Assembly (NCBI GenBank): GCA_905178155.1
Contig: CAJINV010000003.1
Coordinates: 2,757,022 to 2,766,843 of the forward strand
Reading direction: 5' to 3'
DNA length: 9,822 nt
Source of the DNA: Amoebophrya sp. A120
Lineage: Eukaryota > Protista > Dinoflagellata
Position numbers and translations under genes: made by a program. The notes under the pieces are model-generated. The model worked only from the letters and a program-made list of their open reading frames with translations, was not told the DNA's origin and searched no databases. The number at the start of each line of letters is the position of its first letter. Position 1 is the stretch's first letter. Shown piece after piece: positions 1 through 9,822 of the stretch.

Positions 1-252
1 CAATCCCCAAGATATTTTGCAATCCCCAAAATATTTTGCAATCCCCAAAATATTTTGCAATCCCCAAAATATTTTGCAATCCCCAAAATATTTTGCAAGC
101 CCCAAGATGTTTTGCAATCCCCAAAATATTTTGCAATCCCCAAAATATTTTGCAATTCCCGAAATATTTTGCAATCCCCAAAAGATTTTGCAATCCCCCA
201 AATGTTTCGCAATCCCCAAAACGTTGCGCAATCCCCAAAATATTTCGCAATC
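1..252. repeat. 19-bp tandem repeat, consensus CAATCCCCAAAATATTTTG; 13 full units plus CAATC, truncated by the window start
   Basis: Units start at 1, 20, 39 ... 229, 248 with an exact 19-bp period and no indels. Substitutions are most frequent in the units from 153 to 247. Confidence 0.97.
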
Positions 253-1520
253 GGGAAGCAGGGGAAAGGCGGGAGGCGCGGGGAAGGCGGGAAGCACGGG
301 GAAAGTAAGCGGGGAGCGCGGGGAAAGCGGGAAGCACGGAGAAGGCGGGAAGCACGGGGAGAGCGGGTGGGAAGCACGGGGAAGGCGGGAAGCACGGGGA
401 AAGCGGGAAGCACGGAGAAAGCGGGAAGCACGGGGAAAGCGGGCAGCACGGGGAAAGCGGGCAGCACGGGGAAAGCGGGAAGCAAGGGAAGAGCGGGAAG
501 CACGGGAAGAGCGGGAAGCACGGGGAAAGCGGGAAGCAAGGGAAGAGCGGGGAGCACGGGGAAAGCGGGAAGCACGGGGAAAGCGGGAAGCACGGGGAAA
601 GCGGGAAGCACGGGGAAAGTGGATCGGAAAGCATGGGGAAAGCGGGAAGCACGGGGAAAGCGGGAAGCACGGGGAAAGCGGGAAGCAATTACGGGGAAAG
701 TGGGAAACACTTACGGGGAAAGCGGGGAGCACGGGGAAAACGGGAAGCACGGGGAAAGCGGGGAACACAGGGAAAGCGAGAAGCACGGGAGAAGCGGGTG
801 GGGAACGCGGGGAAGTCGGGAAGCACGGGGAAAGCGGGAAACACGGGGAAGGCGGGAAGCACGGGGAAAGCGGGAAGCGCCGGGAAGGCGAGAAGCACGG
901 GGAAAACGGCAAGCACGGGGAAAGCGGGAAGCACGGCGGAAGCGGGAAGCACGGCGGAAGCGGAAAGCGCGGGGAAAGCGGGGGGCACGGGGGAAGCGGG
1001 AAGCACGGGGAAAACGGAAAGCGTAGAGAAAGCGGGAAGCACGGGGAAAGCGGGAAACACGAGAAAAACGGGAAGCATAGGGAAAGCGGGAAGCATAGGG
1101 AAAGCGGGGAGCATAGGGAAAGCGGGAAGCACGGGAACAACGGGAAGCACGAGAAAGGCGGGAGGCACGAGAAAGGCGGGAGGCACGGGGAAGGCGGAAA
1201 GAACGGGGAAAGCGGGGAGCATAGGGAAAGCGGGAAGCACGGGGGGGGCGGGAAACACGAGAAAGGCGGGGGGCAAGGGGAAGGCGGGAAGAACGGGGAA
1301 AGCGGGAGACACGGGGAAGGCGGGAAGCATAGGGAAACGAAAGCGGGAAGCACGGGGAAAACGGGAAGCACGGGGAAAACGGGAAGCATGGGAAAGGCGG
1401 GAGGCACGGGGAAGGCGGGAAGAACGGGGAAAACGGGAAACACGGGGAAAGCGGGAAGCACGGGGAACCGGGAAAAACGGGGAACCGGGGAAAACGGGGA
1501 TAACGGGATGGAAACACGGG
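253..1520. repeat. 18-bp purine/G-rich minisatellite, consensus GCGGGAAGCACGGGGAAA (two related 9-mers), roughly 70 degenerate copies
   Basis: The unit is read directly, with perfect runs at e.g. 565-618. The + strand is almost T-free. The right boundary fades out and is approximate. Confidence 0.95.
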
Positions 1521-3510: not shown

Positions 3511-3929
3511 ATCAAGTGCAAATATGTCTGGGTCCTCTTCAAGGTTACAACTTGTCATGCGAAGTCGCGACCACAAAAAGAAAAATATCTGTGCTGCGTG
3601 AACTACCCCAAAAGCTGCTAACTTCTACCTTAGTAGAAAAGTAGTAGTGACCATGCATTTGACGGATTTCTCATGCAGAATAGGCATTCGGAACGTTGCG
3701 CAAAACCTTTGATGCTTCTGTGTGCATTCCAGACCATGACCGTGTGGCGTGGGGCTGGGGGCTCCGCGAGATGCATGACAAATAACCTTGCCCTCTTCCA
3801 GACCCAGACATTTTTGCAATGCATACGGCAGCGCCAGTGCGGGCAGCAGCCGACGCCGCGCGGCGACCAGGCCAGATGGAGTTGTCATGGATCCCTTCGC
3901 CATTTTCCGATCTTCTCGATTGGTGGATG

Positions 3930-4157
3930 TTAAACCGTGGATGTACTTCTACTTGATGTGGGCAAGCAGTTGATCCTTCCAACGTTTACGCTGCTGCTGT
4001 AAATACACGGGCAAGTACTTCTCGTATTACTGTCTCCTCCTCGTGTTCCTCGTTTATAATTATTTCCGCGGTAGCGCACAACTTCGCCTGTTTTTATTGC
4101 TCTGAGTTTTTTGATATAGTTCTGGCGTCTTAATTGGGTTGCCTTTGTCTTCGACAA
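3930..4157 (-). CDS. Short basic (K/R-rich) ORF or exon fragment, hypothetical
   Basis: 75-codon open frame (SKTKATQLRRQNYIKKLRAIKTGEVVRYRGNNYKRG...). It has no ATG start and no recognisable domain. Confidence 0.2.
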   Translation of the reverse strand: MSKTKATQLRRQNYIKKLRAIKTGEVVRYRGNNYKRGTRGGDSNTRSTCPCIYSSSVNVGRINCLPTSSRSTSTV

Positions 4158-4403
4158 AACAAGTTTTTTTCTTTCTTGGTGGACTGCAAATGCAATGTTA
4201 AAGCACTCGTACTCGATTTACGTTTACTAGGTGATAAGTTGTGAGTTGTGGTAGTAGAAAATTGCGGGGTTCGCAAATTTCAAAACTGATTTTTTTGAGT
4301 TCACGAAAGCAGCGCGCATGAAGGTTTATGTCAAAAGTACGAAGAGTTGTTGAAAACAACACGTACAACTTCACTTTAACTTTTGAACGACGTTAAAGAC
4401 GCT

Positions 4404-4599
4404 CTAATACTCCGACTTGGACGCATAGTGGAGAGAGTTCGAACGACCACGAATACCGAAAGGAAATAACTCAGCTGCATATTGATAAAAACTGGAGTCT
4501 AGCTTTTGCGCCAGCGCCACATATGAACGATAGACATAGAATTGGCGAGGACGAAGCGACATGAATTTCATCATGTAGCGGGACCGATCACACACCTTC
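4404..4599 (-). CDS. Candidate terminal exon, hypothetical protein (KVCDRSRYMMKFMSLRPRQFYVY...SKSEY*)
   Basis: On the minus strand a pyrimidine tract and acceptor CTTCTTCTGTTCGTCAG| (AG at 4600-4601) precede an open frame ending at TAG 4404-4406. Confidence 0.35.
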
Positions 4600-4854
4600 C
4601 TGACGAACAGAAGAAGTGCGCACACTGTCACTGTTCAGACTGAGACTCACACAGACACAGGCTGAATTAATATTTTTATACGAACCACCGAAGAAAAAGA
4701 AATCAGATTGCAATCGCCGCTGGCATCGCAGCAAAGGCGACCGAAATGTTGGGAGGAGTTGAAGACGAGTCGTGCACTGAAAATTTCTGGACGACAGAGC
4801 TGCGGACGACAACTTTGTATACGAACTTCTAGCAACTTGTGAGTTTTTATGCGA

Positions 4855-4892
4855 CGAGAACATTGAACGAGGACGAGGTTAAAAATCTCCTC
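4855..4892 (+). repeat. Dispersed conserved motif, copy 1
   Basis: CGAG-AACATTGAACGAGGACGAGGTTAAAAATCTCCT-C; 33-nt core at 4859-4891. Confidence 0.97.
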
Positions 4893-5405
4893 TGCATCTG
4901 CTAAGCGGCAGTCATCATCAACATCATCATCATCATCAACCTCTTCATCTAGTGCGCAGCACTTTTCTTCCTCCATTTCTTCCTCCATCATCCCTTGCTT
5001 CCTCGAATCGGTAGCAAGTCCGTAATAGTGACTGCTCTGGACCGCGCTGATGATTCCCACCATTATCGCGAGTGCTGCCAGAAGAGCTTGAATCTCGATG
5101 GTGGGGTGGTCGGGACAGAATAATGCACACGCAGAAAGTAGAGCTGTTACAGGTAAAGCGCAGTGGCGAACAACTTGCGCTTGTTCGACGTAATTTCCAT
5201 TTTCAACAGCAGGACGTAGTTGGTAGTTCGGTTTTGCAGGTATAGACTTTTCGCCATCCGCCGCCGACACGCCATCACTTGCGCATCCGCTCCCCGCCCG
5301 CTTCTTCTTCCGTGTCGCTGCGGAACGTGCGAGCTTCAACATCGTGTTCTTGTACTTCTTCGATATCGTTTCTTGCTTTTCATAGCACCACCAGCAGCTA
5401 GCGTC
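4893..5405 (-). CDS. Candidate exon/ORF: basic N-terminal part, hydrophobic segment (ALLAALAIMVGIISAV) and acidic D/E tract running into motif copy 1
   Basis: This is part of ORF 4647..5342. The frame is open upstream to an acceptor-like TTTCGTAG| (TAG at 5406-5408). It formally continues through the motif to 4647, so the 3' limit is uncertain. Confidence 0.45.
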
Positions 5406-5724
5406 CTACGAAACTAAGCACCTGCAGCTTCGTGTTCCTCTGCAATACTTCTAAGGGCTACAGCCAGCGCAGGGCCCGCGGAGTTTTGCCCCTCTCAGTG
5501 CATACTTTGCTTCATGTTCCTAACCGTCAAAACAGAAATGCTCAGAATCTACGAGCTGCACTCTTGCTGCCAGACTCCAATATACCGAAACTGGCTCCAG
5601 ATACGGCTAGGAGCAACGCCGTCTATTTTCTACTAGCTTCCATCACTGTAGTCCCAAGTAGAGCGCCATTTATACTTGACGGCCACAGTCGTCGATCTCT
5701 GTGCGTTCTACTCACGGGCGTCAT

Positions 5725-5886
5725 TTATGCTTGAAATCCAAGCTGTTGGCTCTCCGAGCCTAACATTCCCGACCCCTGCTCGCCCGTGATCATGTCCAGG
5801 CGCGAGGAACCTGCCGGGCGCTGCACGTAATTAGACTCCTGCTGATAGTCCATGAGCCAGTTCTGCTTGCTGCCCGTCGCAAGTTT
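5725..5886 (-). CDS. Candidate terminal exon (KLATGSKQNWLMDYQQESNYVQRPAGSSRLDMITGEQGSGMLGSESQQLGFQA*)
   Basis: On the minus strand a long CT-rich tract ends ...CTCTCGCACATCCAG| (CAG at 5887-5889). The frame is open to TAA at 5725-5727. Confidence 0.45.
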   Translation of the reverse strand, partial: KLATGSKQNWLMDYQQESNYVQRPAGSSRLDMITGEQGSGMLGSESQQLGFQA

Positions 5887-5895
5887 CTGGATGTG

Positions 5896-6001
5896 CGAGA
5901 GGGTGAAAGAGAGGGTAGAGAGAGAAAGAGATGAGAGAGCCAGATAGAGACAACCAAGAGAGAGAGAGAAAAGACACAGCCAGATAGAGACAAGAAAGAG
6001 A
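5896..6001. repeat. (GA)n-rich low-complexity tract containing a 16-bp direct repeat AGCCAGATAGAGACAA (5938-5953 and 5978-5993)
   Basis: Read directly from the sequence; the two copies are 40 bp apart. Confidence 0.85.
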
Positions 6002-6036
6002 CGGCGCTGCCCTCTTTCCATCTTCTGCCTGCTGAG

Positions 6037-6073
6037 CGAGAACATTGAACGAGGACGAGCTTAAAAATCTCCT
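6037..6073 (+). repeat. Dispersed conserved motif, copy 2
   Basis: CGAG-AACATTGAACGAGGACGAGCTTAAAAATCTCCT; core at 6041-6073. Confidence 0.97.
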
Positions 6074-6135
6074 AGAAAGGCACTGTGCTGGCCAGCTTGT
6101 TCGCCAGATTTCGCATGGCCGCTTTGCTGTCCGGC

Positions 6136-6498
6136 TCAGCTCCGTGCTTTCCGCGGCCGGGCCGTCAGGGTGCACTGCGTTCCATCCTCGTGCTCTGCCA
6201 TCGGTGGCATCACGCCCGTGCACGAGAAGTTGCAGACTTTCGCCACGTCGTCGCTCGTTTTGCAATTCCGGCACTCCACCGCCACCTGCCGCGACTGTCT
6301 CACAGTAATCTTCCACTCCCCCGCAGGGCATTTCGTCTTGATTGACTCCTTGCAACGCTGTAGACCGATCTTCTTCCCAGTGTCTTCTTCGACCTCTCTC
6401 CAACTTTGCGGAACTTCAAAGGTCAGCGTGAGGACCTCCTCATCTTCGGAATCGGCTCGCGCTTCCTGGTCCTCCTCGCCCCGCGAATAGTCATCAAT
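6136..6498 (-). CDS. Candidate terminal exon missing from the ORF track: 120 aa, acidic then Cys-rich (IDDYSRGEEDQEARADSEDEEVLTLTFEVPQSWREVEEDTGKKIGLQRCKESIKTKCPAGEWKITVRQSRQVAVECRNCKTSDDVAKVCNFSCTGVMPPMAEHEDGTQCTLTARPRKARS*)
   Basis: Manual translation. The frame is open from acceptor CACATCACAG| (CAG at 6499-6501) to TGA at 6136-6138, with protein-like composition. A consensus donor CAG|GTAAGT lies upstream at 6731-6739. Confidence 0.5.
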   Translation of the reverse strand: MDDYSRGEEDQEARADSEDEEVLTLTFEVPQSWREVEEDTGKKIGLQRCKESIKTKCPAGEWKITVRQSRQVAVECRNCKTSDDVAKVCNFSCTGVMPPMAEHEDGTQCTLTARPRKARS

Positions 6499-6796
6499 CT
6501 GTGATGTGCTTTATTTGAAAATACCTGGCCGCTCCACCCGGTCCGCTCCACAGGTCATGTCCCGAAAACCGGCAACGCGGATGATGCCCATGCCTTTGGC
6601 CGAAGACGCAGGTCGAGAACGGGGAACAAGGCCCGGACTAATTTTCTTCTTTCGTTATCCTTACCTCCGAAATAAGGAGAAACGGAACCAACATCACAGG
6701 ACATGAGACCTACGGAGAATCAAAGGAAAGACTTACCTGACGGCGGCAGTCGGTGATGCTTCGACAGCACCTGGCTCCTTCCTTCTTCTTGATTGC

Positions 6797-6890
6797 ACTA
6801 ACTTGATTCTACTAACCTGATCCTATCACTAACCTGATCCTATCCTAAACCTGATTCCATAAACGTGATCCCAGGTTGATAACGTGAATC
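6797..6890. repeat. Degenerate 14-17-bp tandem repeat (ACTAACCTGATCCTATC, exact copies at 6811-6827 and 6828-6844)
   Basis: About six related units: ACTAACTTGATTCT, ACTAACCTGATCCTATC x2, CTAAACCTGATTCC, ATAAACGTGATCCC, ATAACGTGAATC. Confidence 0.85.
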
Positions 6891-6933
6891 CGCTTCCAAC
6901 CGTTTTCAATAGCACGAGCTTAATTGCAAGAGG

Positions 6934-6974
6934 ACGAGAACCTTGCACGAGGACGAGCTTAAAAATCTGCTCGC
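6934..6974 (+). repeat. Dispersed conserved motif, copy 3
   Basis: ACGAG-AACCTTGCACGAGGACGAGCTTAAAAATCTGCT-CGC; core at 6939-6971. Confidence 0.97.
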
Positions 6975-7571
6975 AATTACAATTGCAATATATTCACTTC
7001 GGCGGGTGGTGGTTGGCGGTGGCCTCTTCGCATGTGGCTCACTAGACCGGGGCAGGGAACGACGCAACGCTATGCACCACGGGCACGCGACTACCAAATG
7101 CCAGTGTGGACGCCAAACCGGGCAGGAGCGCATGCCCATTAAGCTACCTATTTGAATCAGTTTCTTACGACTAGTGGATCAAGCTAACCTTCACCTTAAC
7201 CCTCTGGGGCGATTATGTAACTCGGCGGGGCTGGGTGCAGCGCATACAAACTCCTGCTGCTTAAGCTACGTTTTTTTGCCCAAGTTCATAAGGAACTTTT
7301 TCCACAGCTTCTTTTCTTTAACTTTTCTGTTTTTCAGAACTGCGCGCTGTGAGGTTTCTTACAACTTAGCTTTTGGCGAAGAACAAAAACAGAGAGTCGA
7401 TAAATCATTGCACCTCTCACCCTACTAGTAAACTAACCAAACTACCTCCCCCGGTCGCGCTACGTGCCGAGCATCTCTACTGCACCTGATCCGCACAGGT
7501 GTCGCTACTTTCATACAAGACCTAAATTATGGGAGGGCGATACGCGGAATGCTAACTACACGAGCGGGCGC

Positions 7572-7579
7572 TATATAAG
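7572..7579 (+). promoter_or_regulatory. Possible TATA box (TATATAAG) with GC-rich flanks
   Basis: Matches TATAWAWR, but there is no convincing downstream gene and an 8-mer can occur by chance. Confidence 0.15.
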
Positions 7580-8108
7580 GAGGGCCACGGCACTACTATA
7601 CACACTTTTCTAGTGCACGACCGGCACACCCGCGAACCTCCGCCCGACGCCACGACCACCGGCACAACGGCAGCGTGAGGGATGGACTATTTTAAGCCGT
7701 TTTGGCATAGAGAAAAGCATCCCTTTTCCTTCTTCGCAGTGTATTAAGCTAACTACTCGCCCGACGCAACGGGTGGCGCTACAAAAATCTACTTGCTAAC
7801 ACTGCGAGCTTACGCCTGAGACTACTTTTGTTGTTTGCTTTTGGTGCTTTTGCTTCTACTTCTAACTACTAGCTTTGCGCGGTGCTCTTCCTGCAGCTAC
7901 AACAGCAGCTTCTGCAACTAAAACCGCGGCGACTACTGTCCAGCACCACGGCAACGCTCGGAGCTGAGCAGGTGGTCGTCGAGCCCGGCAGCACCCACGG
8001 CTGCCCATCCATCACCGGTCTACCGCTTGTCCCGTCCCTGCGCAGTCATGTAGTATACCTGCACACTCACGAGGGAAACTCGCGAGACTACAACCCTATT
8101 TGTTCAAC

Positions 8109-8168
8109 AGAGGAGTCGAAATGAGAGGAGACTCTTGCACGGGGGTCGAAATGAGAGGAGTCGAAACG
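8109..8168. repeat. Short tandem duplication of AGAGGAGTCGAAATG; GTCGAAATGAGAGGAG at 8115-8130 and 8145-8160
   Basis: Read directly from the sequence; it abuts motif copy 4. Confidence 0.9.
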
Positions 8169-8206
8169 AGAACATTGAACGAGGACGAGGTTAAAAATCT
8201 GCTCGC
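8166..8206 (+). repeat. Dispersed conserved motif, copy 4
   Basis: ACGAG-AACATTGAACGAGGACGAGGTTAAAAATCTGCT-CGC; core at 8171-8203. Confidence 0.97.
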
Positions 8207-9091
8207 TTAACTCAAAAGCAAACGGGCGCTAATTTCGTTCTTGACGCAATTCAAACCAATTTCAAAAGTTTCAGACTTTGCATTGGGGTGGGTGGGTGTT
8301 GGTCGTTTTTGTGTGCCGATGAACCATTTGGAAAGCAATGAGACACGCGACCACTTCCTAGCTACAATCGCTCGAGCTATCGCTGCTGGAGGATGCACTT
8401 CAACCATCCAAACTGGCGCGCTCTGCTTCACCGAAAAAATGAAGAGGTTGACGCGTCAAAGTAGGTTGCTCAAGGCGAGTAGCCAGGCGCAATTCGCGAT
8501 GGGTGAAGAGCTCGCCCGAAGTCCCCATCTTTCCATCTGTGCATGTTGCAGAAGTTGCGTCTTCCTGCCAACCGCTCAACTTTTCAGAAACAGGAAGGGA
8601 GGCCAGCCTAAATTCGCCAGCAGCCTCGGAGGCCAACTGATGAGAAAAGGCACCGGCCCGCTGGCGGCAGGCCGGTGCCTTTCATCGCCTAGCGTTCGTT
8701 CCAACACCGATGGGTCGTGGCCTGCTTTTCTCGGTGCGAGTACCTGTATTAGTGCTTTTGTATTCGAGAGGACGTCCGATTCCGAAATCGACCAGAGGCA
8801 CACACATACACATCAAGTCAAGCTTGCGCCATACAGAACAAAGAGACTGAATCACCAGACTGCGCGCACGTGAAGTGAAGCGATGCATGGCAGCAATCGC
8901 AATACAAATTGAAAAGAAATTGAAGCTGCGATATACAACTAGAAGCGAAAAAAAATATAAATGCCCGCGCCTGGCTATCAATATGCAGCTGTAGCGCTGC
9001 ATCTCGGTCTAGTAATATTTCTACCTGCGCCTGTGTCTAGTCGTATATCTATATGCATCATTTTTGAATCAAAAGACTCTAACTCATTTAC

Positions 9092-9286
9092 CTGCTCTTG
9101 CGTTTTGTCATTCCCAACCATCATGTTCTCGGTCCCAACGTCAGGAAGAGGAGCACGCGTTTCGTTCGCGTCATCAATAGCAGTTTCTCCAGCAACAAGG
9201 CCACCACCCTTGCCGCCAGGGTTTTTAACTCGGCCACAACGCTTCGGAGGTTGCGGCTGGGCCGTATGCGCGTTCGCAGTCTTCTG
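9092..9286 (-). CDS. Candidate internal exon, 65 codons (QKTANAHTAQPQPPKRCGRVKNPGGKGGGLVAGETAIDDANETRAPLPDVGTENMMVGNDKTQEQ)
   Basis: Manual translation. Acceptor TTTCTTGAACACAG| (CAG at 9287-9289) and donor CAG|GTAAAT (9086-9094), with an open frame between them and AT-richer sequence beyond the donor. Confidence 0.45.
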
Positions 9287-9531
9287 CTGTGTTCAAGAAA
9301 TGACTCGCAGGCTTGCTACGGACACCTGCAACCACGCCGCTCTAGCGGGTGCAGGTAGGAAACAAGCAGGAAAAAACATCGCCCACAGCCAGCGATCTGC
9401 TCTGAAACAGACGAAAGTCCGCAGCTCCAGAGCCGTGATGTGGCAACTACGAAAGGACAGGACTCTTTTTTTCTCAAATAATGTATGACACACTGACACC
9501 CAAAGTTGAAATTTCGGAATTTTTGAATTCA

Positions 9532-9589
9532 TTTTGAATTGGATTTGAAGCAGTTTTAATGTCATTAAAACTGCTTTTGAATTGGATTT
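9532..9589. repeat. 29-bp palindrome (9548-9576) between 15-bp direct repeats TTTTGAATTGGATTT (9532-9546 and 9575-9589)
   Basis: AAGCAGTTTTAATG-T-CATTAAAACTGCTT has perfect 14-bp arms and a 1-nt spacer. Confidence 0.9.
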
Positions 9590-9599
9590 TGAATGAGTT

Positions 9600-9635
9600 A
9601 ACCTTGCACGAGGACGAGCTTAAAAATCTCCTCGC
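9600..9635 (+). repeat. Dispersed conserved motif, copy 5
   Basis: AACCTTGCACGAGGACGAGCTTAAAAATCTCCT-CGC; core at 9600-9632. It lacks the upstream CGAG. Confidence 0.97.
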
Positions 9636-9822
9636 AGTAACGATCAAAATATCATGCGTCAAGAATTTCGTGATGCGGCGGAAATCCTGAGACAGAGCTA
9701 ATATCCGTAACTCACCTGCGTAGGGTTTGTGCTCCAATAGGTATTGCCGATCGGACCACAAATCTTACGCAGGTGACTTCCAGCAATTTGTTCCCAAGGA
9801 TTTTCGCCACATCAAATACTAA

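What the first reader, a model, noticed from the sequence alone, without database searches (positions are those of the whole stretch)
4855..9635. Array of five co-oriented 33-nt conserved motifs separating unrelated ~1-kb segments (cassette-array or long-spacer architecture in apparently eukaryotic DNA)
Seen: the core AAC[A/C]TTG[A/C]ACGAGGACGAG[G/C]TTAAAAATCT[C/G]CT (29 of 33 positions invariant) starts at 4859, 6041, 6939, 8171 and 9600, always on the + strand. The intervening segments are 1149, 865, 1199 and 1396 bp, I see no similarity among them, and similarity between copies ends within a few bases of the core. Established: a short conserved site alternating with unique gene-sized units is the layout of integron attC cassette arrays. 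CRISPR repeats are of similar length but have ~30-40-nt spacers. Ciliate Cbs and nematode elimination motifs mark programmed breakage sites. This motif matches none that I recognise. Inference: it may be the junction or recognition site of an undescribed system that captures, concatenates or excises kb-sized DNA pieces, or a per-unit RNA processing or termination signal. No candidate enzyme is encoded in this window.
Basis: partly seen in the sequence, partly recalled or inferred. Interest (0 to 1): 0.9.

Follow-up and report, generated by a model that had tools for sequence, protein, structure and literature searches.

The report
Reiterated target duplication at retrotransposition hotspot
The repeated 33-base motif is one short stretch of a parasite's genome that was copied again each time a retrotransposon or a reverse-transcribed cellular RNA landed in the same spot, so the "cassette array" is a pile-up of insertions and not a new DNA-capture system.

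Summary
Five motif copies lie at the stated places, all on the + strand. In the 115.5-Mb genome (very probably Amoebophrya sp. A120) the motif occurs 16 times, all in one 18.5-kb locus that runs past the window.

The interpretation needs changing. The segments are copies of sequences from elsewhere in the genome:
- a 5'-truncated 3' end of an RT-encoding non-LTR retrotransposon;
- a non-autonomous element with one constant end and variable truncation at the other;
- a copy of a chromosome-13 gene that lacks three introns;
- an intron-retaining fragment of a Glu/Gln-tRNA synthetase gene.

At other loci, copies of the same element family are flanked by their own locus-specific direct repeats of 35-64 bp, which are long target-site duplications. 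In the array, the sequence right of each motif is a 3-29-nt prefix of the last copy's right flank.

The motif is therefore a 37-62-bp target site, duplicated by about ten successive insertions and then shuffled by recombination at the motif.

The closest precedent is the Drosophila R1 tandem array with 33-nt target duplications. The unusual points are the heterogeneous inserts, the long duplications and the frequent re-use of sites.

First-stage readers noted similar arrays elsewhere in this genome, and I confirmed one (L032). No recombinase was found. Interest is moderate.

The parts
4859..4891 (+). Motif copy 1, the leftmost copy of the duplicated target. Its left flank is the original left flank of the target site.
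4892..6040 (-). Cassette 1, a chimeric insert. Window 5402-6033 is a copy of four exon pieces of a C13 gene, with three introns (1192 nt, about 10 kb, 40 nt) absent. Window 4892-5401 has no other copy in the genome.
   Evidence: The 40-nt intron is present in a DNA contig of the source gene (table 5c).
6041..6073 (+). Motif copy 2.
6074..6938 (-). Cassette 2. It is unique sequence apart from a 99% duplicate, which is cassette 9 of the array. Partial degenerate motif relics lie at 6904-6938. A minus-strand splice donor at 6524 is joined in RNA to an acceptor at 4086.
6939..6971 (+). Motif copy 3.
6972..8170 (-). Cassette 3, the 5'-truncated 3' end of an RT-encoding non-LTR retrotransposon family. 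The element's short tandem-repeat tail (6972-6990) abuts the motif. The element's sense strand is the window's minus strand.
   Evidence: Family hits. RVT_1 matches lie just 5' of this homology at C10 and C14. RT-thumb-like ORF in L035, 44% identical to the L074 pol. Tandem-repeat tails in family copies.
8171..8203 (+). Motif copy 4.
8204..9599 (-). Cassette 4, a composite insert. Window 8409-8687 is 94% identical to a cassette of another repeat-flanked mini-array on C2 (L032). It holds a GT..AG intron on the minus strand (8741-9088) that is spliced out in RNA contigs. Its right 0.96 kb recurs at 99% in cassette 14.
9600..9632 (+). Motif copy 5. It carries a 26-nt rightward extension (to about 9658) that matches the right flank of the last copy.
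9633..9822 (.). Start of cassette 5, cut by the window end and the N run. From 9655 it is a dispersed, partly palindromic repeat found at more than 10 other loci at 92-98% identity.
   Evidence: (I1).
4061..4654 (-). Strongly expressed neighbouring transcript just downstream of the array in minus-strand sense. Depth is 106-375 here against 3-12 over the array. The acceptor at 4086 receives the splice from cassette 2.
   Evidence: tables 2, 5 and 8.

Best explanation
The motif is a single-copy target site of about 40-60 bp in an Amoebophrya-like genome. It has been hit about ten times by reverse-transcription-mediated insertion.

Each insertion used two staggered nicks 37-62 bp apart. Fill-in of the gaps then duplicated the interval, so k insertions leave k+1 copies of the site with one insert between each pair.

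The inserts are whatever RNA the retrotransposon machinery copied:
- its own 5'-truncated 3' ends;
- non-autonomous elements;
- a spliced mRNA and an unspliced pre-mRNA fragment, some joined into chimeras by template switching.

Because both daughter copies of the site stay intact, the site remains a target, which favours further hits. Later unequal exchange within the motif duplicated and reshuffled whole cassettes.

**Shown here:** the origin of the inserts, long duplications at other loci, the nested-prefix pattern, and the exchanges at the motif.

**Inferred:** the RNA intermediate for every cassette, which enzyme does the nicking, and why this site is favoured.
For: 1. **Unique target.** The motif is confined to one locus of 115.5 Mb, with all copies on one strand.
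2. **Foreign inserts.** Cassettes are copies of unrelated sequences from other contigs, and homology ends 0-25 nt from the motif.
3. **Family A (cassette 15).** Copies at L054, L055, L057 and L060 are each flanked by their own direct repeat of 35, 48, 64 and 47 bp. The copies at L052, L054 and L057, like the array's own copy, share one terminus (TATGGACGC...), which abuts the repeat in L054 and L057; L055 has a diverged form of that terminus and L060 lacks it. The other end is cut at different points in L054, L055 and L057 and also abuts the repeat.
4. **Family B (cassettes 3, 10, 12).** This is the 3' part of an RT-encoding non-LTR element. RVT_1 hits lie immediately 5' of it in the same sense at C10 and C14. 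The downstream ORF has an RT-thumb motif and is 44% identical to another LINE pol. Copies end in short tandem-repeat tails.
5. **Machinery present.** The genome holds at least 65 RVT_1 matches with long open frames, including an ORF with an APE endonuclease followed by RT. Non-LTR elements are reported for A120 in the literature (PMC7789003, PMC12130899).
6. **Intron loss.** Cassette 1 lacks three introns of its source gene.
7. **One ancestral site.** The sequence right of every motif copy is a 3-29-nt prefix of the last copy's right flank, and the left side shares 0-3 nt with the first copy's left flank. This is as expected for variable-length duplications of one site.
8. **Common orientation.** Five informative cassette types all have their sense strand on the window's minus strand, with the 3' end to the left.
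9. **Site re-use elsewhere.** L032 has three copies of a repeat (86, 86 and 43 bp) separating two unrelated cassettes. L058 and L052 show similar layouts.
10. **Later recombination.** The 99% intra-array duplications break at the motif. Variants in the left half of the motif follow the upstream cassette and variants in the right half follow the downstream one.
11. **Precedent.** Drosophila R1 tandem elements are separated by 33-nt target duplications, explained by double insertion plus unequal exchange (PMC5932611).
Against: - No poly(A) or other common tail is seen at the 3' ends of the gene-derived cassettes.
- Cassette 13 retains an intron. Taken alone, it could be a DNA-level copy.
- The three 'missing introns' of cassette 1 are non-canonical. 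In principle they could be introner insertions that entered the source gene after the copy was made.
- The RT start side (right edge of the motif) is the more variable edge (0-25 nt), and the 5' junction side is nearly fixed. This is the reverse of the classical picture, in which the first nick is the precise one.
- Cassette 6 belongs to a messy family whose polarity I could not fix, and it may lie in the opposite orientation.
- For family B, my search found no flanking duplications at other loci.
- Cassettes 2, 7 and 8 have no source elsewhere in the assembly.
- No empty-site allele or orthologue could be examined.
- Why one site was hit about ten times is not explained.
Confidence: 0.7

Rival explanations
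1. This is a recurrent fragile site and not a retrotransposon endonuclease target. The partly palindromic motif, just upstream of a strongly transcribed gene, would suffer repeated staggered breaks. Repair would then capture whatever cDNA or DNA fragments are at hand, independent of any endonuclease, and fill-in would duplicate the overhang.
For: - The motif has dyad elements (CGAGGA...TCCTCG; inverted partial copy before copies 8, 11 and 13).
- Cassettes are mosaics of several sources.
- One cassette retains an intron and could be DNA-derived.
- The position of the right edge is ragged.
- The array lies next to a highly expressed transcript.
Against: - The same long duplications flank single insertions at many unrelated loci that share no motif. 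This points to a property of the insertion machinery and not of this site.
- The inserts have a common orientation, and one family has a constant 3' terminus.
Confidence: 0.15
2. This is an integron-like or Crypton-like system. A tyrosine or serine recombinase would integrate circular cassettes at the motif, with the crossover inside ACGAGGACGAG.
For: - Variants in the left and right halves of the motif segregate with the upstream and downstream cassette respectively, as at an integron recombination site.
- Cassettes recur in new contexts.
- First-stage notes mention tyrosine-recombinase elements, and a recombinase-bearing stack of cassettes, elsewhere in this genome (unverified).
Against: - The source sequences carry no copy of the motif, so a circle would have nothing to recombine with.
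- No recombinase domain was found in the ORFs tested from about 40 kb around the array.
- The nested-prefix pattern of variable duplicated length does not fit a fixed crossover point.
- Homologous exchange within the 33-bp repeat explains the reshuffling.
Confidence: 0.06
3. The motif is a functional per-unit signal, either a promoter or first-exon element (as in clustered protocadherin genes) or an RNA processing site, and it is kept by selection. Each cassette would supply an alternative 5' exon that is spliced to the neighbouring gene.
For: - One RNA contig starts inside motif 3, runs through cassette 2 and splices from 6524 to the neighbouring gene's acceptor at 4086.
- The motif shows only four variable positions.
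Against: - Depth over the array is 10-50 times lower than over the gene.
- Other RNA contigs run unspliced across motifs 1 and 14.
- Cassettes are pseudogene and transposon debris with no shared exon structure.
- Substitution divergence between cassettes and their sources is only 3-4%, so the motif's conservation needs no selection.
Confidence: 0.05
4. This is an assembly or library artefact, with chimeric long reads joined by an adapter-like sequence.
For: - The region is bounded by N runs.
- 923 bp are duplicated at 100% identity across a gap.
- One copy's flank scores marginally against one adapter string that I recalled from memory.
Against: - Contigs from two independent public studies (DNA-like and RNA) contain motif-cassette junctions at single-copy depth.
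- The motif has structured variants.
- There is no significant similarity to the adapter strings in six of the seven copies tested.
- The same architecture, with other repeats, occurs at other loci.
Confidence: 0.02

Closest known systems
Drosophila melanogaster R1 tandem array (non-LTR element; 33-nt rDNA target duplications between units) and the 'double insertion' model of McGurk and Barbash 2018 (PMC5932611)
   Same: Repeated insertion into one target keeps the target-site duplication at every junction. The repeat length is similar (33 nt). The array is later expanded and reshuffled by unequal exchange. Some units are 5'-truncated.
   Different: In R1 the inserts are all the same element, and the target is a multicopy rRNA gene recognised by a site-specific element. 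Here the target is unique in the genome. The inserts belong to at least three repeat families plus cellular RNA copies. The duplicated length varies from 37 to 62 bp.
LINE-mediated processed pseudogenes and chimeric retrocopies (L1-type target-primed reverse transcription with template switching)
   Same: Intron-less gene copy, 5' truncation, variable-length target duplications, chimeric inserts made from two or more RNAs, and dependence on RT supplied in trans.
   Different: There are no poly(A) tails. The duplications are two to four times longer than is typical for L1. One cassette retains an intron. Many insertions are stacked in one site.
Site-specific non-LTR elements with long target duplications (for example SLACS/CZAR/CRE in trypanosomatid spliced-leader genes; recalled from memory, not checked here)
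   Same: Tens-of-bp target duplications and repeated use of a defined target.
   Different: Those elements target a conserved multicopy gene and insert only themselves. No site-specific element was identified here.
Bacterial integron cassette arrays and CRISPR arrays
   Same: The layout only: a short conserved site alternating with unrelated units, all in one orientation. As in CRISPR adaptation, the repeat is duplicated at each insertion.
   Different: There is no integrase or cas gene. The cassettes carry no recombination site of their own. The units are retroelement and pseudogene fragments of 0.65-1.7 kb. The organism is a eukaryote.

Membership tests
Reiterated target-site duplication from non-LTR (TPRT-type) retro-insertion | Direct repeats flanking each insert derive from a sequence that was single-copy before insertion. 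| tested here: met
   The motif is absent from the rest of the genome. Flank sequences are nested prefixes or suffixes of the outer flanks.
Reiterated target-site duplication from non-LTR (TPRT-type) retro-insertion | The same element at other loci is flanked by different, locus-specific duplications. | tested here: met
   Family A at L054, L055, L057 and L060 has repeats of 35, 48, 64 and 47 bp. For family B my search found none.
Reiterated target-site duplication from non-LTR (TPRT-type) retro-insertion | Constant 3' end and variable 5' truncation. | tested here: met
   In family A the terminus TATGGACGC... is shared by the array copy and by L052, L054 and L057 (diverged in L055, missing in L060). 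The opposite end is cut at cassette positions 949, 1318, 1677 and 1688.
Reiterated target-site duplication from non-LTR (TPRT-type) retro-insertion | Inserts are related to an element that encodes reverse transcriptase (and an endonuclease). | tested here: met
   Family B homology lies 3' of RVT_1 matches at C10 and C14. The L035 ORF is 44% identical to the L074 pol. An ORF with APE endonuclease and RT is present in L072. A full-length family B element could not be fetched.
Reiterated target-site duplication from non-LTR (TPRT-type) retro-insertion | 3' tail (poly(A) or short tandem repeat) next to the duplication. | tested here: inconclusive
   Family B copies have tandem-repeat tails. Family A ends without a tail, and the gene-derived cassettes have no poly(A).
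Reiterated target-site duplication from non-LTR (TPRT-type) retro-insertion | Gene-derived inserts lack the introns of the source gene. | tested here: inconclusive
   Cassette 1 lacks three introns. Cassette 13 keeps an intron of about 200 nt. Cassettes 4 and 14 keep a GT..AG intron.
Reiterated target-site duplication from non-LTR (TPRT-type) retro-insertion | An empty (pre-insertion) site exists in an allele or a relative. | not testable with these tools
   No related eukaryotic genome is available here. Scans of metagenome and viral contigs for the motif found nothing.
Integron | An adjacent tyrosine-recombinase integrase, and attC sites carried by each cassette. | tested here: not met
   No recombinase domain was found in the ORFs tested from about 40 kb around the array. 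Source sequences have no motif copy.
CRISPR array | Spacers of about 30-40 nt between repeats, cas genes, and a prokaryotic host. | tested here: not met
   The 'spacers' are 655-1690 nt. The genome is a 115.5-Mb eukaryote with spliced transcripts.
Clustered alternative first exons (protocadherin or UGT1 type) | Each unit has its own promoter element and a donor that is spliced to shared constant exons. | tested here: inconclusive
   Only one such join was seen (6524 to 4086, depth 7). Other RNA contigs cross motifs unspliced. The two raw RNA runs laid no reads.

The most novel reading that the evidence does not exclude
In Amoebophrya the retrotransposition machinery may nick outside its recognition sequence. 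Each insertion would then regenerate, and double, an intact long target. That would make hotspots self-propagating: they would grow into oriented archives of cellular and transposon RNAs at many loci. Such arrays could be a major route of gene-fragment shuffling and of intron or exon birth in this lineage. If they are transcribed, as this one weakly is, they could also feed transposon silencing, as piRNA clusters do.
Probability: 0.2. Interest if true: 0.75.

Novelty: new variant of a known kind. Interest (0 to 1): 0.45.

Why it matters
- It removes an apparent "eukaryotic integron or CRISPR" by tracing the pattern to retro-insertion.
- It shows that this parasite's retroelements make unusually long duplications (about 30-64 bp).
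- It shows that the same target is re-used far more often than chance allows, stacking unrelated RNA copies in one place.
- That bears on how dinoflagellate-lineage genomes recycle cDNAs, on how tandem arrays and satellites start, and on how gene fragments and introns are shuffled.
- It gives a rule for reading the many similar "repeat-spacer" loci that first-stage readers flagged elsewhere in this genome.

Tried and rejected
- **Spliced-leader relic.** The motif's reverse complement precedes the 5' end of a cDNA-like cassette, and stacked partial motif copies resemble stacked leader relics. I rejected this because neither half of the motif exists outside this locus, and because Amoebophrya uses the canonical DinoSL (PMC7789003). 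At most a 5-nt GCTCA remnant is seen at cassette 1.
- **Repeated coding micro-exon.** One + frame reads TLNEDE(V/L)KNLL, and two of the four variable sites are synonymous in it. No motif-to-motif joins were seen, and RNA contigs run unspliced across motifs.
- **Virus-like gene-junction signal, Helitron ends, L1-type TTAAAA nick.** The cassettes are host copies, the motif is confined to one locus, and the junctions do not lie at the A-run.
- **Known RNAs.** There are no Rfam or tRNA hits in 30 kb.
- **Nanopore adapter.** Similarity is no better than to shuffled sequence in six of the seven copies tested.
- **RIP-like decay of cassettes.** There is no C-to-T excess. The excess is A-to-G.
- **Motif in other collections.** There were no hits in the metagenome or viral contig scans.
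- **Pfam on ORFs of families A, B and C and of the flanks.** Nothing was found except the Glu/Gln-tRNA synthetase fragment, an unrelated oxidoreductase gene 10 kb away, and ankyrin repeats.
- **Raw RNA runs X9 and X10.** No reads were laid, so they give no test.

Full report
**Observation**

The degenerate 33-mer occurs at window 4859, 6041, 6939, 8171 and 9600, always on the + strand, with none expected by chance. The four segments between these copies share no similarity.

The window is C3:2757022-2766843 of a 115,520,608-base, 401-contig assembly. Either half of the motif, with up to two mismatches, is found 16 times in that assembly. All copies are on the + strand and all lie within C3:2761877-2780296. 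The window therefore holds the left third of a single-locus array.

I did not verify the organism independently.

The window is bounded by N runs. The 2871-N run after it is flanked by 923 bp of 100% identical sequence, so motif copies 5 and 6 may be one copy.

**Artefact check**

I laid contigs from public runs on window 3900-9822.
- A DNA-like run (X1) covers every bin. Its depth is 42-107 over the array and 46 over the flank. Its contigs break or branch exactly at the motifs, as expected for a true repeat.
- A second study's run (X3) contains spliced joins, so it is RNA, and its contigs cross motif-cassette junctions.
- Adapter strings recalled from memory align no better than to shuffled sequence in six of the seven copies tested.

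The array is real DNA.

**What the segments are**

Searching the array against its own genome shows that most cassettes are copies of sequences elsewhere, with homology ending 0-25 nt from the motif.

- **Cassette 1.** On the minus strand it holds four pieces of a C13 gene that are contiguous in the cassette. In the source they are separated by 1192 nt, about 10 kb and 40 nt. The 40-nt piece is present in a DNA contig of the source (table 5c). These introns are non-canonical with short direct repeats at their edges, as described for this organism.
- **Cassette 13.** It is a fragment of a Glu/Gln-tRNA synthetase catalytic domain on the minus strand. It is collinear with a gene 22 kb upstream, includes an intron, and is followed by a 155-nt dispersed repeat.
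- **Cassettes 4 and 14.** They keep a minus-strand GT..AG intron that is removed in RNA contigs.
- **Cassettes 3, 10 and 12; cassette 6; cassette 15.** These belong to multi-copy families.
- **Cassettes 2 (= 9), 7 and most of 8.** They have no other copy in the assembly.

**The decisive result**

Copies of the cassette-15 family at other loci are each flanked by their own, locus-specific direct repeat: 35 bp (L054), 48 bp (L055), 64 bp (L057) and 47 bp (L060).
- The array copy and the copies at L052, L054 and L057 share one terminus (TATGGACGCACACTC...). It directly abuts the repeat in L054 and L057. L055 has a diverged form of the terminus, and L060 lacks it.
- The opposite end is cut at different internal positions in L054, L055 and L057 and also abuts the repeat.

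This is the classical signature of 5'-truncated copies made by target-primed reverse transcription, but with unusually long target-site duplications.

The family of cassettes 3, 10 and 12 is the 3' part of an RT-encoding non-LTR element.
- RVT_1 matches at C10:2699621-2700292 and C14:39431-40099 lie just 5' of this family's homology and in the same sense.
- The ORF that continues from the C10 match has an RT-thumb-like motif and is 44% identical to the pol of another element.
- Family copies end in short tandem-repeat tails such as CAATT, CAGTT, TAGT or AGTCA units, as many LINE clades do.
- In the window that tail sits directly against motif 3.

The genome has at least 65 RVT_1 matches with long open frames, one of them with an APE endonuclease in front of the RT.

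**The motif as a duplicated target**

If the motif is a reiterated target duplication, the bases next to each copy should be pieces of the original flanks. They are.
- The sequence to the right of every copy is a 3-29-nt prefix of the right flank of the last copy. Two derived variants are shared by copies 13 and 15.
- The left side shares 0-3 nt (GAC) with the left flank of the first copy.

The duplicated length is about 37-62 bp, the same range as at the other loci.

Five informative cassette types have their sense strand on the window's minus strand, with the 3' end on the left:
- the LINE 3' end;
- family A;
- the synthetase fragment;
- the GT..AG intron;
- probably the C13 copy.

So priming was mostly from the plus-strand nick at the right edge of the site. 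Composite cassettes fit template switching.

**After insertion**

Intra-array duplications at 99% identity start or end within a few bases of the motif. Variants in the left half of the motif (positions 4 and 8) travel with the upstream cassette, and variants in the right half (positions 20 and 31) with the downstream one. Homologous unequal exchange within the shared repeat explains this.

Point divergence between cassettes and their single-copy sources is only 3-4%. The few variable motif positions therefore need no selection.

**Expression**

RNA contigs cover most of the array at depth 3-12, against 106-375 for the neighbouring transcript at 3900-4654. One contig starts in motif 3, runs through cassette 2 and uses a minus-strand GT donor at 6524, joined to an acceptor at 4086. 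Others cross motifs 1 and 14 unspliced. I read this as weak read-through or cryptic transcription of the array into the neighbouring gene. The proximity to an active gene may help to explain why the site is hit so often, but that is inference.

**Site re-use elsewhere**

- L032 (C2) has three copies of a repeat (86, 86 and 43 bp) around two unrelated cassettes. One of those cassettes is the source of part of cassette 4.
- L058 has three copies of a 33-bp repeat.
- L052 shows nested duplications.
- Several first-stage notes describe further arrays with 28-70-bp repeats on other pieces of this genome. Apart from the loci above, I did not check them.

**Comparison with known systems**

The principle is known. 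Drosophila R1 elements form a tandem array separated by identical 33-nt target duplications, explained by double insertion followed by unequal exchange, and P-element dimers keep their 8-bp duplication at the junction (PMC5932611).

What differs here:
- the target is unique in the genome;
- about ten hits of unrelated inserts, including cellular RNA copies;
- duplications of 37-62 bp;
- apparent frequency of multi-hit sites.

Integron, CRISPR and protocadherin-like readings fail their defining features (see the membership test). I found no description of these arrays in the two Amoebophrya papers I consulted or in three full-text searches.

**Limits**

- No empty site, no full-length autonomous element of family B and no raw-read RNA evidence could be obtained.
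- The enzyme that makes the nicks, and the reason for site re-use, are inferred.
- The RNA origin is well supported for families A and B and for cassette 1. It is not shown for every cassette.

Noticed in passing
window 1-1500: There are two adjoining satellites: about 13 copies of a 19-bp unit (CCCAAAATATTTTGCAAT) followed by about 58 copies of an 18-bp G/A-rich unit. They lie inside a mechanical 816-aa open frame and sit next to an N run.
   Followed up: no
window 6524 -> 4086 (minus strand): An RNA contig joins a GT donor inside cassette 2 to the acceptor of the strongly expressed neighbouring transcript. It skips cassette 1 and two motif copies, so insert debris is being exonised into a host mRNA at low level.
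   Followed up: partly
C3:2766844-2769714 (N run right after the window): The gap is flanked by 923 bp of 100% identical sequence on both sides. This is probably an unclosed or redundant assembly join, which would reduce the motif count from 16 to 15.
   Followed up: partly
L032:326-2705 (C2:5980554-5982933): This is a second mini-array. Three copies of a direct repeat (86, 86 and 43 bp) separate two unrelated cassettes of about 1-1.2 kb. One of these cassettes is the 94% source of window 8409-8687.
   Followed up: partly
L036, L037, L039, L040, L048, L049: In each of these loci, a composite insert of 1.3-2.2 kb built from palindromic, introner-like modules is flanked by a unique direct repeat of 39-57 bp at 94-100% identity. 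Long duplications are therefore not limited to one element family.
   Followed up: partly
cassette 13 vs L061; cassette 15 vs L052/L055: The differences between cassette and source show an A-to-G excess on the window's + strand (12 against 5 G-to-A in cassette 13; 20-27 in cassette 15). There is no RIP-like C-to-T excess, contrary to one first-stage note. The direction of change is unknown for the repeat families.
   Followed up: partly
L035:230-320 (C10:2700600-2700690): The LINE pol ORF carries a Cys/His zinc-finger-like segment (HRCHRC...H...C) just before the RT-thumb FTYLG motif. This is an unusual position for such a segment.
   Followed up: no
reg copies 8, 11, 13 (e.g. L018:5125-5160): Immediately left of these motif copies lies an inverted partial copy (CCTCGTGCAC) of the motif's TGCACGAGG. 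Together they form a 9-bp stem with a loop of about 9 nt across the insertion junction.
   Followed up: no
window 6904-6938 and 8112-8170: Degenerate partial motif copies, and a 19-nt unit repeated three times, are stacked just left of motifs 3 and 4. They may be remains of aborted or partly deleted earlier insertions.
   Followed up: no
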